Part shown: piece after piece, positions 24,101-39,100 of the stretch
Position numbering within the stretch: position 1 is the first letter of the stretch
How the letters are laid out: each line of letters opens with the position of its first letter
Source of the DNA: Octopus sinensis
Lineage: Eukaryota
Assembly: GCF_006345805.1 (NCBI RefSeq)
Contig: NC_043002.1
Span: forward strand, 66,030,001 to 66,094,000
DNA: 64,000 nt
Direction: 5' to 3'
Position numbers and translations under genes: made by a program
Notes under the pieces: model-generated
Told to the model about the DNA's origin: nothing
What the model saw: the letters and a program-made list of their open reading frames with translations, nothing else
Databases searched by the model: none

Positions 24101-27100
24101 AATAAATTGCATAATACTGTGAGAGTTACAAAGGAAAAAAAATACAAGTGTATCAAGTTAAAACATTCTAAAACTACTACTAATATGCATAACAATATTT
24201 CTCTCCTACAAGACAGGATACTTTCTACATTGCTATGTTGGGGGGCTTTTCATTAAAAAAAAATATTTTATACCTAATTCTCAAACTAGTTAAGCTACTA
24301 GAAAGTTGTATTAGTAAATATTAGGAAACATAGTCTAACTAACTCACAAGTGTAGTTCATGTGATAACTGTCAACCAATATACAGCAATTAATCACGTAA
24401 CCTACGTAACTGTCATTCAGGAAGCAATACTTTCCTGTAAAAAACTTTTATTTCATGTTCATAATTTTGTTGAAATTAACAGCCATTGCATGTCTTATCA
24501 GATAGACTTCAGTTCTTTAGTGTCCATACCCAAGATTAATATACATTTATGTAAATACGGTGCAAAAAATACAGCTTCAGACAATGATAAGATACCAAGG
24601 TGAAAAACATCTGGTCAATGAGGTCAATTTAACGAATATTGTTATATCTGACCATTTTGAATACTAAATGACTGAAGAAATGGTCCTAGTTCAGGGCTTA
24701 TAAATATGACCACCTAACTCACACTGTGAAATTGACTGAAGAAAAGGAAAACAATGCATTGATTCTCTTACATAGTACCAGTACTGTTTAGTTGCATACC
24801 TTAATTATTTGAAGCACTTCCTTTAAAACCTGGAACAGAAATAGCCATGTGGTTAAGAAGTTCACATCACAAACTGGTTCCCAGTTCAATCCCACTGCAT
24901 AGGGTCAACCAAGATTTTGAGAATTTGCTATGTAGCATCCATGCAGAAGCCTGTGATGTGTGTTGATATTTGTGTAGATCACATTGGCATTGTATCTTTT
25001 GCATCATCAAGGTAAGTGACATTATATAAAATAGCTAAGTAACAAAATAAAGTACTGGGGTTATCAATGCCATCAACTAAAAACCCCTAGAAAGTAGACC
25101 CCCTAATGTGGCTGCAATCCAATAACTGGAATCAGTAAAAGAATAACTTACCTTATCAAAGTGATGAATTGCTAACCAGATTTCTCCTTGGGCATTGAAA
25201 ACACAGCCCAGATTACTCCAGGCAACAGCAAAATTTGGTTGTGTCTCAATAGCTTTCAGGTAACATGCCTAAAGTGTAGGCAAATTTACAGTTATAAACA
25301 AAATAAATGATGTTTGTACAGGTTGGCAAAAGACAAAGAAAGTTAAAAAGAACATCCAAAAGCAAAGCGCTCAAGTCGCCTGCGCTCCAGTAGAAGTTTT
25401 GCACTATGAACTAAACGCGCGCAATAATACTGTGTTAAGCACTAACCATGCATATAGGATTTTAGAACCATGTTTTCTTAGGCAACCTAACAAATTAACA
25501 TCTGTATAAATGCATCATCTAGAGATTTAGCAAAAGAAAAAAATGAAATTATTTTAGGGGGAAAAAAAGCAAAATTAAATATTGGTGAATACATTTTAAT
25601 AAATCTAAAATTTAAGTTATTTATATATTTGAAAAGTTAGCTGCTAAAAGAAATTTTGGTTCTATAAACCATACATTAGTGATGACTTGTGCTGATAACA
25701 CCAAAGTAAAACAAAAATTATATATATATATATATATATATGCATATATACACACATATATATGCATACACACATTCACGCATTTTATATACATACATAT
25801 ATGGAATTAAATATATATGTATATAAAAAAATTTTTTAAAAAAATAAAGATGTCATTTCTCTTCTCTTGTAATAATAGGAGAAGAAAGCCGTTCTGCTTG
25901 GTGAAATAAAATAATTAGGTTTCACTTCTCTTCTCCCAACAAGCTGCCTCATCATGGGTAGCCACACACACATGACGTTTTGAAGTATTTCTCTAACTCT
26001 AGTTATTATTCGAATGAAAACTTTTGCTTGTTTTCTTTTTATTTTTTCATTAACAATGAAAAACTGACACTCCCTTCACTGATTATTACAAATTTTGCAA
26101 AATAAAACACTTAAAATAAGGTGTTATTTATATAGCCCAAAGTGAATGAAAATGTACTTTTAGAATTTATCAGTCAAGAAATTTTGGATAAATTGAAGAC
26201 ATCCAAGTCATCCATGACAAGATGAGGAAACTTTAAAATACAGGAGAAGAAATCTGACATCTAAAAAAAAATTATCTATTCGCCTGCGATCAAGTGCGTC
26301 CGCGCAATGCTTCGCGCGCTAAGGGAATAAAAAAGTAACTGCATAAAATACATACACACAAAAATACTGATATAGAAATATAAAAATGAAATAGACAAAG
26401 AAAAAAATTGTAAAGAAACGAAATAAAAATGTAAAAAAAAATCTAATAGAAGAAAAATGAAAAAAGATAGAAAAACAATTATTCTGAAAAATTAGCAATA
26501 ATTTTGGAGAAATTAGTGATGTTATGAAAAATGACTTTATAAAAAAAAGCTTGTATGAAAAAATATGAAAAGAACCTTAAAAAATCAGTATTATAGTAGT
26601 CACTTTTAATAATACAAATTAAGTTATTTGATGCTGGTGTTTTTGTTTTCTATTTTTCTTGTATTTTAGGGCATATCAATATCCTTTCAACTGCAGTATA
26701 ATGGCATAAAGAGGTAAAGCTGTTACATGGGACAGTAGGATAGAAAGAGAGAGAGAGGAAAAGAAAACAAAATCACCATTCAAGGAAACCAACAAGAAAT
26801 ATTCTATCACTAATAATCTCAGTAGAAAGCAGACATAAATTCTCACCCTTTTACTTAAATAAAATAAAAAAGAAAAACAAACTTTAATATATATTCCTGG
26901 ACAAATTCCTCTTACAATAATAAAAAAAACATGAAACAGGAATCCTCTACTGTAAATAATGCGTAAAAGAAAATATGCTATTTCTGTCATCCCTTATTAA
27001 CCAATTTTTGATGGAAAATTTTTAATATGTGACACACTGATTACATTTTGAAGAAATTCCATTCCATAAAAATGCAAAAATACTGGTTCATACATGTAGT

Positions 27101-36100: not shown

Positions 36101-39100
36101 TTAGATATCAACCTGCCAGGACCCACTCCTGCCTTTATAAAACAAATTGTTTTAAAATAATCTAAAAACCTTCCATCAGAATTTCATACTAATTTATGTC
36201 CCAAACAACAGCTTTAATAACGACCAAGTTATTTTAATAACGTATTCAGTATTTCCAAAATTAATTGAAACAAAGCATGAGTGTTTCAAAAAAACAGGGT
36301 AACAAAGGGGTTAAAAATGATTCAATTTTCTTTAACAAGAATGATTAATCAAAAGATTAAGGTCTAGTGCTGGTTCAAAGTAGACCTGTTCAAATGTAGT
36401 GATAAGGATGCCTCCCCATTTGTAAAGAACACAGTGGTTTGAAACCTTTATTCTACAAATCTTTCTAGGTTTAGCTCTCCCTCTAAATTCATTAGCTATA
36501 CAATAGCTGACAAGCAAATTATCAAGAAATATTTTGCTTTACATCTAAAAGCCTTCTCTAACAAAATACATTTGATACCTAAGCTGTTACCTATGCTCTA
36601 TTTATAACTGCAACTGTTATAAATAGAGCAAGCAGAAATTTCAATTAACTGTTTTTCACACTATCGTGGATTCTCATATTTTAGAAAAAAATTAGTTTGA
36701 GAAAACAGTTTTATATATTGCATGATAAAATGCTTTATTGGGTTTCTATTTATAAAACATGACTACGAGCTGAGCTAATTTTTATCAAGTTGGAATACCT
36801 GCCATCAATATCTGTTGAGATTGGATTCATATCTGCTTAGCAATACAAAAGTAGAAATAAGTACTAATTCTAAAGGAGATTTCCATTTTTCAAGTGTGAA
36901 ATATACAATTATGAAACACAATTTTAATTTGGCTTTTATTTGGAGGGTCTAACTGATCAAAGTAAATGAGGATGATAAGGAAATCGAAAGCAATTTCAGG
37001 TAAAAATTCAAACAAAAAAAATAATAAAATAAGTAATGTGTTCATTTTTTTGTTTGAATTTTTAAAAAGAAACAAAATGTCCAGATATGTTCAAGCCCCA
37101 GCTCATCATCTAGAAAAACAGGGAATCCCGGGAAAATCAACATGACCACACTGCAGTCTTCTGACAGAAGATAAAAACTTATTAAATAGATTTGACAAAG
37201 GATGGTTTAACATCTTTGAGACAGTTAAATGGATAAATTGATCCCATATCTACAATATTGTATATTACAAAGGAAAAGAAAAGATTGACAGTCAATCTCA
37301 TACATACATACATACATATATGTACACACACACATATATATAAATACATAAATATATTTATATATATATGTTTATATATATGCACTCAGACATATCTATA
37401 TACACATATGTAATATATAGATTTATTTACACAAAATATAGGTGTGGAGTAAAATTTTCATGACACAGGAAGTACATATTTTACCTTTGCCTCATCCAAT
37501 CGCCCCAATGCCTTGAGCAAGTTACCCAGGTCACTCCGTACACAATACAAATCCTGTAATGATAAAAACAAAACAGGGTTTTAAAATCCAAGAAATAATA
37601 TTAGCAGCAAAATATTAAAATCTGTGTGCATGGATACATACTGAAAAATTTAACTATGTAACACTGATATTCAAAATTAGCTTAACCGTTTTGTCCATTC
37701 CTCCATGTTGGCATGGATTAGATGACACCCTTCCTAATACTAACCTTTGACTGTTCTTGAGATTTCTCAATCTCCACAGCATGCAATGCACAAAGAAAAT
37801 AGATAATTTATTAAGAAGTGCCAACACTACCATTCAAGCAATGTGACTTTCATACAAACAAGTGCAATTGTAAACAGATGCATTTGTATACATATGCCAT
37901 CAGGGTATTTTTTTAATGCTTGCAAGCATAGGATGGAATTCTTTGAGGCACATTTTCTATGGTCAGGTGCTGTTCTAGTTGGCAGATGCTACCTGTTTCC
38001 AAGCAAGATAATTGTCCCCATAGCCTAGCAAGTGTCTATGCCGATTGAAAATGAATGACACTGCTCATATGATGATGGTGGTACACATTTACAAACTATC
38101 AGGCAATGTGAAGACAAAGCAATTCAAACAAGTATATATATACTGTGTGCGAGAAGACCCGGCAGGACAAGTGAGACCATAACCTGTGGCCTTCTACATG
38201 GGATGGAGCCAGCCTACGTATGCATACCTTCCCTTCTTGGGACACAAAACTCTACTTGTGAAGACCTGTTGAGGCAAGTGAGGATCAGAATCGAAATCGA
38301 TCAATGGAAATTGCAGCTGAGTTACCAGTGCCGGTGGCACGTAAAAGCACTATCCGCTTGTGTCCGTTGCCAGCCTCGCCTGGCCCCCGTGCCAGTGGCA
38401 CGTAAAAGCACCATCCGTTCGTGTCCGTTGCCAGCCTCGCCTGACCCCCATGCCGGTGGCACGTAAAAGCACCATCCGTTTGTGGCCGTTTGCCAGTTCC
38501 GTCTGGCACCTGTGTGGGTGGCACGTAAAAAGCACCCACTACACTCACGGAGTGGTTGGCGTTAGGAAGGGCATCCAGCCATAGAAACACTGCCAGATCA
38601 GACTGGGCCTGATGCAGCCTTCTGGCTTCACAGACCCCAGTTGAACCGTCCAACCCATGCTAGCATGGAAAGCAGACGCTAAATGATGATGATGATGATG
38701 ATATATATATATATACTAGCACTATGACCCGGCGTTGCCGGGTCATAGTGCTAGTGCAGGCATATACAGATGCGTGCGTGCGCACATACACGCAAGTACT
38801 GTCCAAATCTCTGACCAATCACATACAGCTAGCTGGCATTCAATTGGTGTATCAAGTTTCGGGCATTTTGATTGGGTTTTGGATAGGAAATTCACAAAAA
38901 GTCACTTCTATTGATTTTTTAATGGCTTTGCGGGGTGACTGGGGAAATGTAAAGATGTGCTTGACCACCCTCTAACTGAAAAATTGTGGATTTGTATAAA
39001 GGACACACACAGACATTTTGCCGTTTATATATAGAGAGAGATACACACCTCAAAATATGAGTATATGTATATTTTTAATATTTAGCAGAAGCAGCTCTAG

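What the first reader, a model, noticed from the sequence alone, without database searches (positions are those of the whole stretch)
25269..37484. The intron orthologous to the vertebrate OGT detained intron is the longest coding-region intron and is rich in non-repeat islands
Seen: 12,216 nt, versus 2,516 and 4,467 nt for its neighbours. Stretches at about 27.0-29.7 kb and 33.6-36.0 kb lack recognisable copies of the SINE/RTE families that recur every 1-2 kb elsewhere. They instead hold unique, GC-elevated or splice-signal-rich islands. Established: E2-E6 sizes (151/244/69/117/80) match human OGT exons 2-6 as I recall them, which fixes intron orthology. Inference: selection against insertions in regulatory intronic sequence, i.e. 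an ancient or convergent intron-detention module.
Basis: partly seen in the sequence, partly recalled or inferred. Interest (0 to 1): 0.72.

Follow-up and report, generated by a model that had tools for sequence, protein, structure and literature searches.

The report
Ultraconserved poison exon in octopus OGT
The long fourth intron of the octopus O-GlcNAc transferase gene hides a stop-codon-carrying "poison" exon and several other blocks that have stayed almost unchanged between octopus and cuttlefish, which suggests that molluscs tune this enzyme by unproductive splicing in the same intron that vertebrates use.

Summary
The window holds exons 2-22 of an Octopus (sinensis or vulgaris) OGT gene on the minus strand. 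Exon sizes 151/244/69/117/80 equal those of a vertebrate OGT locus, so it is the positional orthologue of vertebrate intron 4.

It is not the longest CDS-splitting intron. Intron 1 exceeds 20.3 kb, and exon 1 lies beyond the window.

Against a distant octopod and a cuttlefish genome, only intron 4 has alignable intronic sequence (4.1 kb and about 2.3 kb, in collinear blocks). Every other intron aligns only at exon edges.

The core (29077-29555) is 97.7% identical between octopods, against about 93% for coding exons. It contains a cassette exon (29442-29187 or 29442-29170). Three cuttlefish RNA-seq contigs splice this exon between exons 4 and 5. It has a stop after 26 codons, stops in all frames, two alternative 5' splice sites, and the densest cluster of 5'SS-like motifs in the intron.

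The donor 12-mer AGGTATTGTATA recurs once, sense strand, in intron 4 of a scallop and a gastropod. I found no significant sequence similarity to the vertebrate decoy exon.

Unproductive splicing is strongly indicated. Intron detention and O-GlcNAc responsiveness are untested.

The parts
37485..37553 (-). OGT exon 4 (69 nt, [23 protein letters not shown]). Upstream flank of the regulated intron.
   Evidence: tblastn and the splice model. It is 100% identical to octopod L006 and 92.8% to cuttlefish. Exons 4 and 5 are the two exons best conserved with cuttlefish.
25269..37484 (-). Intron 4 (12,216 nt), positional orthologue of the vertebrate OGT detained intron.
   Evidence: Same exon sizes and phases as vertebrate locus L010. 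It is the only intron with intronic alignments to L006 (34% aligned against 1-10% for the others) and to cuttlefish.
37119..37242 (-). Conserved block A, about 250-370 nt downstream of the exon 4 donor.
   Evidence: 94% identical to L006. 84-88% identical to cuttlefish over 37121-37231.
33530..35675 (-). Cores at 35073-35157, 34555-34781 and 33817-33863. A long-range stem is predicted.
   Evidence: 60-72% identical overall and 94-96% in the cores against L006. 73-91% against cuttlefish. The MFE z-score is -3.2 for 34540-35180, from only 20 shuffles and with no covariation data.
29077..29555 (-). Ultraconserved core (479 nt) holding the cassette exon, with about 110 nt of upstream and about 95 nt of downstream intron.
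   Evidence: 97.7% identical to L006, where coding exons are about 93%. 84-86% to cuttlefish over 29057-29646, and the first ~90 nt of the exon are identical.
29170..29442 (-). Poison/decoy cassette exon, long form (273 nt, donor AAT|GTGAGT). The short form is 29187-29442 (256 nt, donor AAG|GTATTG). The acceptor is ttctacacaag|CAATGCAGG.
   Evidence: Cuttlefish RNA-seq contigs L007, L008 and L009 carry the orthologous exon spliced to exon 5 (L007 and L009 also to exon 4; L008 starts inside the cassette), using both donors. The stop comes after 26 codons in the exon 4 frame, and there are stops in all frames. Indels of 11, 5 and 2 nt against cuttlefish argue against coding. The donors score 1.9 and 7.2 bits, against 7.4-13.3 for the gene's constitutive donors. 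There are 10 5'SS-like sites, against a mean of 2.07 per 280 nt.
29176..29187 (-). AGGTATTGTATA: the short-form donor, a 12-mer shared by all molluscan OGT intron 4 sequences examined.
   Evidence: It occurs once, on the sense strand, inside intron 4 of two other octopods, the cuttlefish, the scallop and the gastropod. In the gastropod it sits exactly at the donor of the intron-4 exon. It is absent from the vertebrate loci fetched at the time of the search, L010 and L011. Expected counts are 3e-4 and 8e-5.
26190..26792 (-). Conserved block D1 (core 26274-26705), with the CpG-rich motif GCGCGCGAAGCATTGCGCG...CGCAGGCGA.
   Evidence: 94.4% identical to L006 in the core. 68-71% to cuttlefish.
25325..25426 (-). 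Conserved block D2, about 55-160 nt upstream of the exon 5 acceptor. It repeats the GCGCGCG and CGCAGGCGA motifs.
   Evidence: 96% identical to L006. It lies within a block aligned to cuttlefish, 25269-25489.
25152..25268 (-). OGT exon 5 (117 nt, [10 protein letters not shown]...HHFDK). Downstream flank.
   Evidence: 98.3% identical to L006 and 94.9% to cuttlefish.
30229..31236 (.). Young insertion with a piggyBac-type transposase fragment (ORF 30448-30780). It lies in the unconstrained stretch between the conserved blocks and is not part of the module.
   Evidence: Absent from O. bimaculoides. Pfam PF13843, E = 7.9e-10.

Best explanation
Intron 4 of octopus OGT carries a splicing-control module that is conserved across coleoid cephalopods.

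Its centre is a non-coding cassette exon (window 29442-29187 or 29442-29170, minus strand). When this exon is spliced between exons 4 and 5, it places a stop codon 26 codons in. The resulting mRNA is unproductive and is predicted to be an NMD target.

The exon has two weak alternative donors and a cluster of GGTCAGT-type pseudo-donors. It sits in a ~480-nt core that is better conserved than the coding exons. At least six further conserved intronic blocks surround it: near the exon 4 donor, mid-intron, and just upstream of the exon 5 acceptor.

I infer that spliceosome assembly on this exon diverts part of the OGT pre-mRNA away from productive exon 4-exon 5 joining. The diversion could work by inclusion plus decay, and possibly by stalling (detention) of the flanking intron halves. 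This would give post-transcriptional negative feedback on OGT abundance, as in vertebrates.

Shown: orthology of the intron, the conservation pattern, the existence and splicing of the exon in cuttlefish, and the stop codon.
Inferred: use of the exon in octopus itself, NMD, detention, and O-GlcNAc sensing.
For: 1. Orthology. The intron separates ...GRLDEAK from ACYLKAIE.... The exon sizes 151/244/69/117/80 are identical in a vertebrate locus.

2. Selective constraint.
- Against octopod L006, 4,104 nt (34%) of intron 4 aligns in five collinear syntenic blocks. All 19 other introns align 1-10%, as spill-over from exons.
- Against the cuttlefish genome L013, nine collinear intronic blocks fall in intron 4 and none in any other intron.
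- Segments with >=94% identity to L006 total about 1.5 kb, while coding exons are about 93%.

3. Exon use. Logan RNA-seq contigs L007 and L009 (two runs) have a 242-258-nt insert exactly at the exon 4/5 junction; L008 (a third run) starts inside the same cassette and joins it to exon 5. It is 91% identical to window 29170-29442 and uses two donors 17 nt apart. Gene calling on L007 and L009 splits the ORF into 189 aa + 852 aa.

4. The acceptor, both donors, ~80 nt upstream and ~90 nt downstream are near-identical in all four cephalopod genomes.

5. The exon is non-coding. It has stops in all frames, no AUG after the last stop in the frames that read into exon 5, and non-triplet indels.

6. The density of 5'SS-like motifs is the maximum of the intron.

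7. The same design exists elsewhere.
- Scallop intron 4 (the longest coding intron mapped in that locus; exon 1 not located) has a 94-nt frameshifting cassette, used in RefSeq model P0158.
- Gastropod intron 4 has an internal exon spliced to exon 5.
- All share AGGTATTGTATA.

8. Vertebrate precedent: intron 4 is the most conserved OGT intron, with a PTC-bearing decoy exon that has paired splice sites (PMC5588854, PMC7261177, PMC12017769).
Against: - No octopus transcript could be retrieved. The octopus protein cluster has no RNA-seq-derived members, and the Octopus RefSeq protein isoforms do not include the exon.
- Nothing here measures retention, nuclear localisation, NMD or response to O-GlcNAc.
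- There is no significant sequence similarity to the vertebrate ISS/decoy: blastn E >= 0.006, nhmmer E >= 0.14 and outside intron 4, local-alignment z of 1.0-1.7.
- The exon core shows no unusual folding (z = +0.36).
- A 12-kb intron is much longer than typical detained introns.
- The functions of blocks A, B and D are unassigned. They could act at the DNA level.
Confidence: 0.7

Rival explanations
1. The intron-4 exon is an alternative coding or first exon that yields an N-terminally truncated OGT protein isoform. This would resemble mammalian mOGT, whose specific exon also lies in intron 4. On this reading the conservation reflects an internal promoter plus isoform-specific sequence.
For: RefSeq lists short OGT isoforms that start right at ACYLKAIE... 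in mussels, scallops and gastropods. Contig L008 begins inside the cassette. Blocks D1 and D2 carry conserved CpG-rich motifs in an AT-rich intron.
Against: In octopus the cassette has stops in all three frames, and no AUG after the last stop in either frame that reads into exon 5. Indels against cuttlefish are 11, 5 and 2 nt. L007 and L009 contain exons 1-4 upstream of the cassette, so it is an internal exon. The scallop 'isoform' is read from an out-of-frame ATG inside exon 4, which is an annotation consequence of a frameshifting cassette. Identity above that of coding exons, extending into both flanking introns, is typical of regulated non-coding exons.
Confidence: 0.1
2. The conserved blocks other than the cassette (A, B, D) are DNA-level elements, either enhancers or conserved non-coding elements acting on OGT or a neighbouring gene. 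They happen to lie in this intron and are not splicing elements.
For: Cephalopod genomes are known to hold conserved non-coding elements (established knowledge). No splice function was assigned to blocks A, B or D here. No Rfam family matches them.
Against: All intronic conservation in the 64-kb window is confined to the one intron that holds the poison exon. Intron 1 (>20 kb) has only a single 196-nt weak match. Blocks A and D2 hug the exon 4 donor and the exon 5 acceptor. Exons 4 and 5 themselves are the exons best conserved with cuttlefish at nucleotide level. The vertebrate detained intron is likewise conserved along much of its length (PMC7261177).
Confidence: 0.12
3. The conservation reflects double-stranded RNA structures needed for coleoid A-to-I editing of exons 4 and 5 (intronic editing-complementary sequences), not control of splicing outcome.
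For: Coleoids conserve sequence around editing sites (established knowledge). Exons 4 and 5 are unusually conserved at synonymous positions. Block B is predicted to fold better than shuffles, z = -3.2.
Against: The best-conserved element is a spliced cassette exon with no unusual folding. The predicted block B stem pairs intron with intron, not with an exon. The inverted-repeat scan found only TA/TG microsatellite pairings. The shared donor motif extends to bivalves and gastropods, which lack extensive recoding.
Confidence: 0.05

Closest known systems
Vertebrate OGT intron 4 detained intron with its intronic splicing silencer and decoy/poison exon (Park et al. 2017, PMC5588854; Tan et al. 2020, PMC7261177; Parra et al. 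2018/2020; PMC12017769)
   Same: - Same intron position and phase.
- The intron is far more conserved than all other OGT introns and has an ultraconserved core (397 nt identical among human, mouse and rat; 479 nt at 97.7% between octopods).
- An internal cassette exon with a premature stop.
- Paired alternative, weak 5' splice sites.
- Intron 4 is among the longest coding introns in every locus examined: the longest mapped in the vertebrate L010, scallop L012 and cuttlefish L013, and second to intron 1 in the octopods.
   Different: - No significant sequence similarity.
- The exon is 256/273 nt, against 143-153 nt in human and 142 nt in L010.
- The donors are 17 nt apart rather than 7. No second acceptor was seen.
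- The intron is 12.2 kb, against about 2.9-3.2 kb.
- The cephalopod exon has a cluster of GGTCAGT pseudo-donors.
- Detention, NMD and O-GlcNAc responsiveness are demonstrated in vertebrates only.
Ultraconserved poison exons of SR-protein and other splicing-regulator genes (Lareau et al. 2007; Ni et al. 2007, cited in PMC7261177)
   Same: A PTC-introducing cassette exon. Its nucleotide conservation exceeds that of neighbouring coding exons and extends into the flanking introns. It is presumed to act in homeostatic autoregulation through unproductive splicing.
   Different: The host gene is a glycosyltransferase, not an RNA-binding protein, so feedback must run through an O-GlcNAc-sensitive splicing factor that is unknown here. 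The conservation documented here is within Mollusca, not Vertebrata.
Mammalian mOGT alternative exon in intron 4 (Hanover et al. 2003, cited in PMC5588854)
   Same: An exon located inside intron 4 that is spliced to exon 5.
   Different: mOGT is described as a coding isoform with its own start codon and targeting peptide. The octopus exon has no start codon open into exon 5, and it is internal to transcripts that contain exons 1-4.

Membership tests
OGT intron-4 decoy/poison-exon module (vertebrate type) | Lies in the intron between the exons encoding ...GRLEEAK and ACYLKAIE... (intron 4) | tested here: met
   Intron 25269-37484 separates GRLDEAK from ACYLKAIE. The exon sizes 151/244/69/117/80 equal those of vertebrate L010.
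OGT intron-4 decoy/poison-exon module (vertebrate type) | The intron is much more conserved than the gene's other introns | tested here: met
   34% of intron 4 aligns to L006, against 1-10% for the others. Against cuttlefish, intronic alignments occur only in intron 4.
OGT intron-4 decoy/poison-exon module (vertebrate type) | An internal cassette exon that introduces a premature stop codon | tested here: met
   Cuttlefish contigs L007 and L009 include the exon between exons 4 and 5 (L008 begins inside it), splitting the ORF into 189 + 852 aa in L007/L009. The octopus orthologue has a stop after 26 codons. Use in octopus itself is inferred from the identical splice sites.
OGT intron-4 decoy/poison-exon module (vertebrate type) | Weak and alternative 5' splice sites on the decoy exon | tested here: met
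   Two donors 17 nt apart are both used in cuttlefish transcripts. They score 1.9 and 7.2 bits, against 7.4-13.3 for the 20 constitutive donors.
OGT intron-4 decoy/poison-exon module (vertebrate type) | Sequence homology to the vertebrate ISS/decoy exon | tested here: not met
   blastn E >= 0.006 on low-complexity matches. The nhmmer profile gives E >= 0.14, on the wrong strand and in the wrong place. The local-alignment z is 1.0-1.7, with 31-82 of 500 shuffles scoring at least as high.
OGT intron-4 decoy/poison-exon module (vertebrate type) | Polyadenylated intron-containing transcripts are detained in the nucleus | not testable with these tools
   No nuclear/cytoplasmic RNA data and no octopus transcript contigs could be reached.
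OGT intron-4 decoy/poison-exon module (vertebrate type) | The splicing outcome responds to cellular O-GlcNAc level | not testable with these tools
   This needs treatment of cephalopod cells or tissue with OGA and OGT inhibitors.
Ultraconserved poison exons (unproductive-splicing autoregulation) | Nucleotide conservation of the exon and its flanks exceeds that of neighbouring coding exons | tested here: met
   The core is 97.7% identical, against about 93% for exons (L006). The cassette is 91% identical to cuttlefish, against 75-87% for most exons.
Ultraconserved poison exons (unproductive-splicing autoregulation) | The inclusion isoform is degraded by NMD | not testable with these tools
   Only the sequence rule is met: the stop lies 175-192 nt upstream of the next exon junction (coordinates corrected).
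Alternative first or coding exon giving a truncated OGT (mOGT-like) | The exon supplies a start codon in frame with exon 5 | tested here: not met
   There are stops in all three frames, and no AUG after the last stop in the frames that enter exon 5.
Alternative first or coding exon giving a truncated OGT (mOGT-like) | Transcripts initiate at the exon | tested here: inconclusive
   L007 and L009 carry exons 1-4 upstream of the cassette. L008 starts inside it, but that may simply be a contig end.
Known structured ncRNA families (Rfam) | A covariance-model match at or above the gathering score | tested here: not met
   There are no matches at gathering score in the window. The sub-threshold hits are only TA/TG microsatellites.

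The most novel reading that the evidence does not exclude
Regulation of OGT by a poison/decoy exon in intron 4 is ancestral to bilaterians, or at least far older than vertebrates. On this reading the molluscan cassette, with its shared AG|GTATTGTATA donor, and the vertebrate decoy exon descend from one exon whose sequence has turned over. O-GlcNAc homeostasis by unproductive splicing would then be one of the oldest autoregulatory splicing circuits outside the splicing-factor genes. Its loss in Drosophila would be secondary.
Probability: 0.3. Interest if true: 0.85.

Novelty: new member of a known kind. Interest (0 to 1): 0.7.

Why it matters
OGT is the only enzyme that adds O-GlcNAc, and its level is tightly buffered. 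In vertebrates that buffering runs through the detained fourth intron and its decoy exon. The published view is that the element reaches back only to jawless fish and is absent from Drosophila (PMC5588854).

A positionally identical, ultraconserved poison exon in cephalopods, with traces in bivalves and gastropods, has three consequences:
- It would push this regulatory logic into protostomes.
- It gives a second, sequence-independent example from which the essential features of the module can be read: weak paired donors, pseudo-donor clusters, and conserved blocks next to the flanking splice sites.
- It offers a defined target (window 29170-29442) for testing O-GlcNAc feedback in cephalopods.

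It also flags RefSeq 'short OGT isoforms' in molluscs as probable NMD isoforms rather than proteins.

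Tried and rejected
- Look-ups of the O. sinensis isoform P0001 and the cuttlefish P0003 found no genomic record. The longest isoforms P0125, P0126 and P0137 worked.
- A search of the 5.8-billion-protein collection with the 85-aa ORF of the cassette core found nothing. No octopus RNA contigs could be reached that way.
- Rfam gave nothing at gathering score. At relaxed E-value it gave only mir-297/mir-466-type pseudo-hits on TA/TG microsatellites.
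- ARAGORN found no tRNA-like SINE heads.
- Folding of the exon core was unremarkable (z = +0.36).
- The inverted-repeat scan for exon-intron pairing was swamped by microsatellites.
- By eye, the cephalopod exon and the vertebrate decoy seemed to share ordered motifs (ACTAATGATC before the acceptor, CAGGTG.G just inside, CAGAC..CTCCTCCT further on). Shuffling and genomic-window controls show this is not beyond chance, and I reject it as evidence of homology.
- O. bimaculoides is too close to be informative, at about 91% identity everywhere.
- ORFs in the non-conserved middle of the intron gave only one Pfam hit, a piggyBac transposase fragment.

Full report
**What is in the window.** tblastn with a human OGT sequence, followed by a splice-site-aware junction search, places exons 2-22 of an O-GlcNAc transferase gene on the minus strand, from 43666 down to the stop codon at 8-10. 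The spliced protein is identical to the Octopus sinensis and O. vulgaris isoforms, and differs at a few residues from O. bimaculoides. The window is therefore from O. sinensis or O. vulgaris.

**The observation.**
- The intron is exactly as stated: 25269-37484, 12,216 nt, with donor AAG|gtaaaa and acceptor ctttag|GC. Its neighbours are 2,516 and 4,467 nt.
- Exons 2-6 are 151/244/69/117/80 nt.
- I checked the orthology claim against real sequence rather than memory. A vertebrate OGT locus (L010, assembly GCA_029215685.1) has exon 1 with the ATG, then exons of 151 (or 181), 244, 69, 117 and 80 nt with the same phases. Its fourth intron (2,858 nt) follows ...GRLEEAK.
- Park et al. describe the regulated human intron as the fourth intron, flanked by exons 4 and 5 (PMC5588854). 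Positional orthology holds.
- One claim fails. Exon 1 (MAQISDTT, phase 1) is not in the window. The window end maps about 0.9 kb short of exon 1 in O. bimaculoides. Intron 1 is therefore >20.3 kb here, 22.8 kb in O. bimaculoides and 12.1 kb in a third octopod.
- Intron 4 is the longest intron lying wholly inside the window. It is the longest of all introns in cuttlefish (9,001 nt against about 8.3 kb for intron 1), and the longest coding intron mapped in the scallop (3,049 nt; exon 1 not located).

**Repeats and composition.**
- A self-comparison of the window finds 18 interspersed-repeat copies in four families, one of them with 11 copies. None lies in intron 4, although the intron is 19% of the window. 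Under uniform placement, the chance of zero copies is about 0.02 (my arithmetic).
- Adding non-syntenic hits to two other octopod loci gives 5% repeat coverage in intron 4, against 14% in the other introns pooled.
- The depletion therefore applies to the whole intron, not just to the two islands.
- The intron is not free of transposons. Positions 30229-31236 are absent from O. bimaculoides and encode a piggyBac transposase fragment.
- At 1-kb scale the islands are GC-poor (0.29-0.31). The only strongly GC-elevated spot is 29269-29468, at 0.56.

**Conservation, the key result.** I fetched four orthologous loci:
- O. bimaculoides (L005);
- an unnamed octopod assembly, GCA_054771915.1 (L006), whose exons are about 93% identical to the window;
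- Acanthosepion (Sepia) pharaonis (L013);
- outgroups: a scallop (L012), a gastropod (L014) and two vertebrates (L010, L015).

O. bimaculoides is too close to be informative, at about 91% everywhere.

Against L006, intron 4 aligns over 4,104 nt (34%) in five collinear, syntenic blocks. Each of the other 19 introns aligns over only 1-10%, essentially as exon-edge spill-over. The 20 kb of intron 1 in the window aligns over 1%.

Against the cuttlefish, which represents the other coleoid superorder, nine collinear blocks fall in intron 4 and none in any other intron.

Segments with >=94% identity to L006 are 37119-37242, 35073-35157, 34555-34781, 33817-33863, 29077-29555 (97.7%), 26274-26705 and 25325-25426.

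The part from 27.0 to 28.2 kb is not conserved.

Exons 4 and 5 are the best-conserved exons at nucleotide level against cuttlefish (92.8% and 94.9%, against 75-88% for the rest) and among the best against L006 (100% and 98.3%).

**What the core is.** The protein cluster of cuttlefish OGT contains 852-aa products from Logan RNA-seq assemblies.
- Contigs L007 (SRR30931879) and L009 (SRR25097170) are mRNAs with exons 1-4, then a 242-258-nt insert, then exon 5 onward; L008 (ERR4009593) begins inside the same insert and continues through exon 5. The insert sits exactly at the exon 4/5 junction.
- The insert is 91% identical to window 29170-29442.
- The octopus acceptor is ...tcttttttgatttctacacaag|CAATGCAGG.
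- L009 uses the donor GCTGAAG|GTATTG, which gives a 256-nt octopus exon at 29442-29187.
- L007 and L008 use CTTAAAT|GTGAGT, 17 nt further on, which gives a 273-nt exon at 29442-29170.
- Read from exon 4, the exon gives [26 protein letters not shown] and then a stop. This matches the 189-aa upstream ORF called on the cuttlefish contigs (163 + 26 residues).
- All three frames contain stops. Neither frame that reads into exon 5 has an AUG after its last stop. Octopus and cuttlefish differ by indels of 11, 5 and 2 nt.
- The exon is therefore non-coding, and its inclusion makes the mRNA unproductive.
- The four-genome alignment shows the acceptor region, the first ~90 nt of the exon, both donors and about 90 nt downstream to be nearly invariant.
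- I scored donors with a matrix built from the gene's own 20 donors. The two used donors are weak (1.9 and 7.2 bits, against 7.4-13.3). The exon holds 10 donor-like GT sites at >=3 bits, against 2.07 +/- 1.66 per 280-nt window in the intron, and no other window reaches that count. They include a GGTCAGT series.

**Other blocks.**
- Block A lies 250-370 nt past the exon 4 donor.
- Block D2 lies 55-160 nt before the exon 5 acceptor. It shares the CpG-rich motifs GCGCGCG and CGCAGGCGA with block D1.
- Block B is predicted to form a long-range stem (GGAAGUUCAGGCUGG pairing with CCAGCCUUAACUUCC), and folds better than shuffles (z = -3.2, 20 shuffles). Both arms are invariant, so there is no covariation evidence.
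- No Rfam family matches any block.
- The roles of these blocks are unassigned. Their placement next to the regulated splice sites fits splicing control, but DNA-level function is not excluded.

**Beyond cephalopods.**
- RefSeq short OGT isoforms that begin at ACYLKAIE... exist in mussels, scallops and gastropods.
- In the scallop locus, the isoform-specific peptide maps to a 94-nt exon inside intron 4, with its own acceptor and donor. In the normal frame it gives a stop after nine codons. The annotated protein is read from an out-of-frame ATG within exon 4, so this too is a frameshifting cassette.
- In the gastropod, the specific peptide is encoded by an exon inside intron 4 (3,214 nt) whose donor is GGAG|GTATTGTATAAC.
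- The 11-mer GGTATTGTATA (preceded by A in every case: AGGTATTGTATA, the cephalopod short-form donor) occurs exactly once, on the sense strand, inside intron 4 of every molluscan locus, and not in the vertebrate loci fetched at that point, L010 and L011.
- First-order Markov expectations are 3.3e-4 for the scallop intron and 8.1e-5 for the gastropod intron.
- Local alignment of the cephalopod exon region to the scallop region beats 499-500 of 500 dinucleotide shuffles. The gastropod comparison is weaker.
- I take this as good evidence that the cassette, or at least its donor, is homologous across molluscan classes.

**Relation to vertebrates.** Comparing two vertebrate loci, I located the vertebrate decoy exon in L010 at about 8631-8772 (142 nt). 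Its acceptors are 3 nt apart and its donors 7 nt apart. This agrees with the published human 143-153-nt decoy with two 3' and two 5' splice sites (PMC12017769). No test detects similarity between it and the cephalopod exon:
- blastn of whole introns;
- an nhmmer profile of four cephalopods;
- local alignment with shuffles and genomic-window ranks: z of 1.0-1.7, ranks 61 of 690 and 245 of 2,546.

Motif resemblances that I saw by eye are not beyond chance. The architecture and position are shared, but sequence homology is not demonstrable.

**Mechanism.** The best-supported reading is an unproductive-splicing switch. Exon definition on the weak-donor cassette competes with direct exon 4-exon 5 joining. 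Inclusion gives a stop more than 170 nt upstream of the next junction, which predicts NMD.

By analogy with vertebrates, stalled spliceosome assembly on the cassette could also detain the two half-introns (8.0 kb and 3.9 kb), and O-GlcNAc level could set the balance (PMC5588854, PMC7261177). These steps are inferred. Given the size of the intron, I rate inclusion followed by NMD as more likely than whole-intron detention.

Crude support for regular use comes from the cuttlefish contig counts: 3 contigs carry the cassette, against 33 carrying full-length products.

**Novelty.** Full-text searches found no paper that links OGT intron retention with octopus, OGT decoy exons with invertebrates in any relevant sense, or cephalopods with poison exons in this gene. 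Park et al. state that the ISS is conserved to jawless fish and that Drosophila lacks an ISS-like element. I therefore file this as a new member of a known kind: the OGT intron-4 poison/decoy-exon module, documented here in molluscs.

**Limits.**
- There is no octopus transcript evidence.
- The species identity of L006 is unknown.
- Repeat content was judged only from about 180 kb of sequence, without a repeat library.
- Splice-site scores come from a 20-site matrix.

Noticed in passing
window 17410-17424 (exon 8 donor region), 17255-17418 and 16801-16910: Exon 8 has an alternative donor 9 nt downstream, which adds the residues VRK (isoforms with KGKVRKVAEAE). Apart from intron 4, this is the only place where intronic sequence aligns to the distant octopod L006 (284 nt).
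   Followed up: partly
window 3992-4013 and exon 18 (4914-5090): RefSeq octopus isoforms show an alternative acceptor that adds 21 nt (MNKLLFQ) before exon 19, and an isoform that skips exon 18 (972 aa).
   Followed up: no
window 38325-38715 (intron 3), with copies at 7766, 9140, 10699, 21447, 23607, 41110, 42666, 55058, 56825 and 58164: An 11-copy interspersed repeat family of 80-600 nt. The intron 3 copy accounts for the local GC peak (0.48). ARAGORN detects no tRNA-like head, and I did not identify the family.
   Followed up: partly
window 37300-37381, 27819-27860 and 25719-25775: TA/TG microsatellites lie about 100-180 nt inside the 5' end and about 450 nt inside the 3' end of intron 4. 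Similar tracts occur at matching places in L006. They produce sub-threshold mir-297/mir-466 Rfam hits, which are artefacts. Whether they pair to bring the intron ends together is untested.
   Followed up: partly
window 26270-26325 and 25340-25425: Two conserved blocks 900 nt apart repeat the CpG-rich motifs GCGCGCG and CGCAGGCGA, in an intron that is 31% GC. The first copy can form a GCGCGC...GCGCG hairpin. Its function is unknown.
   Followed up: no
L012 6021-6114 (scallop) and protein P0158: The RefSeq scallop 'isoform X2' (895 aa) is translated from an out-of-frame ATG inside exon 4, through a 94-nt frameshifting cassette. It is probably an NMD isoform annotated as a protein. The mollusc short isoforms that begin M-ACYLK may be similar cases.
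   Followed up: partly
L014 22500-23670 (gastropod OGT locus): A tandem array of about 25 copies of a ~45-nt unit that encodes RLYLKALEV, the end of a TPR exon, lies in the intron downstream of that exon.
   Followed up: no
window 60996-61191 (intron 1): This is the only stretch of the >20-kb intron 1 that aligns to the distant octopod (73% over about 200 nt). I did not examine it.
   Followed up: no
protein P0124 (O. vulgaris, 811 aa); window about 19166-19190: An annotated O. vulgaris isoform starts with MFVF, which is read from the end of intron 6. This suggests retention of intron 6 or an internal start in that annotation.
   Followed up: no
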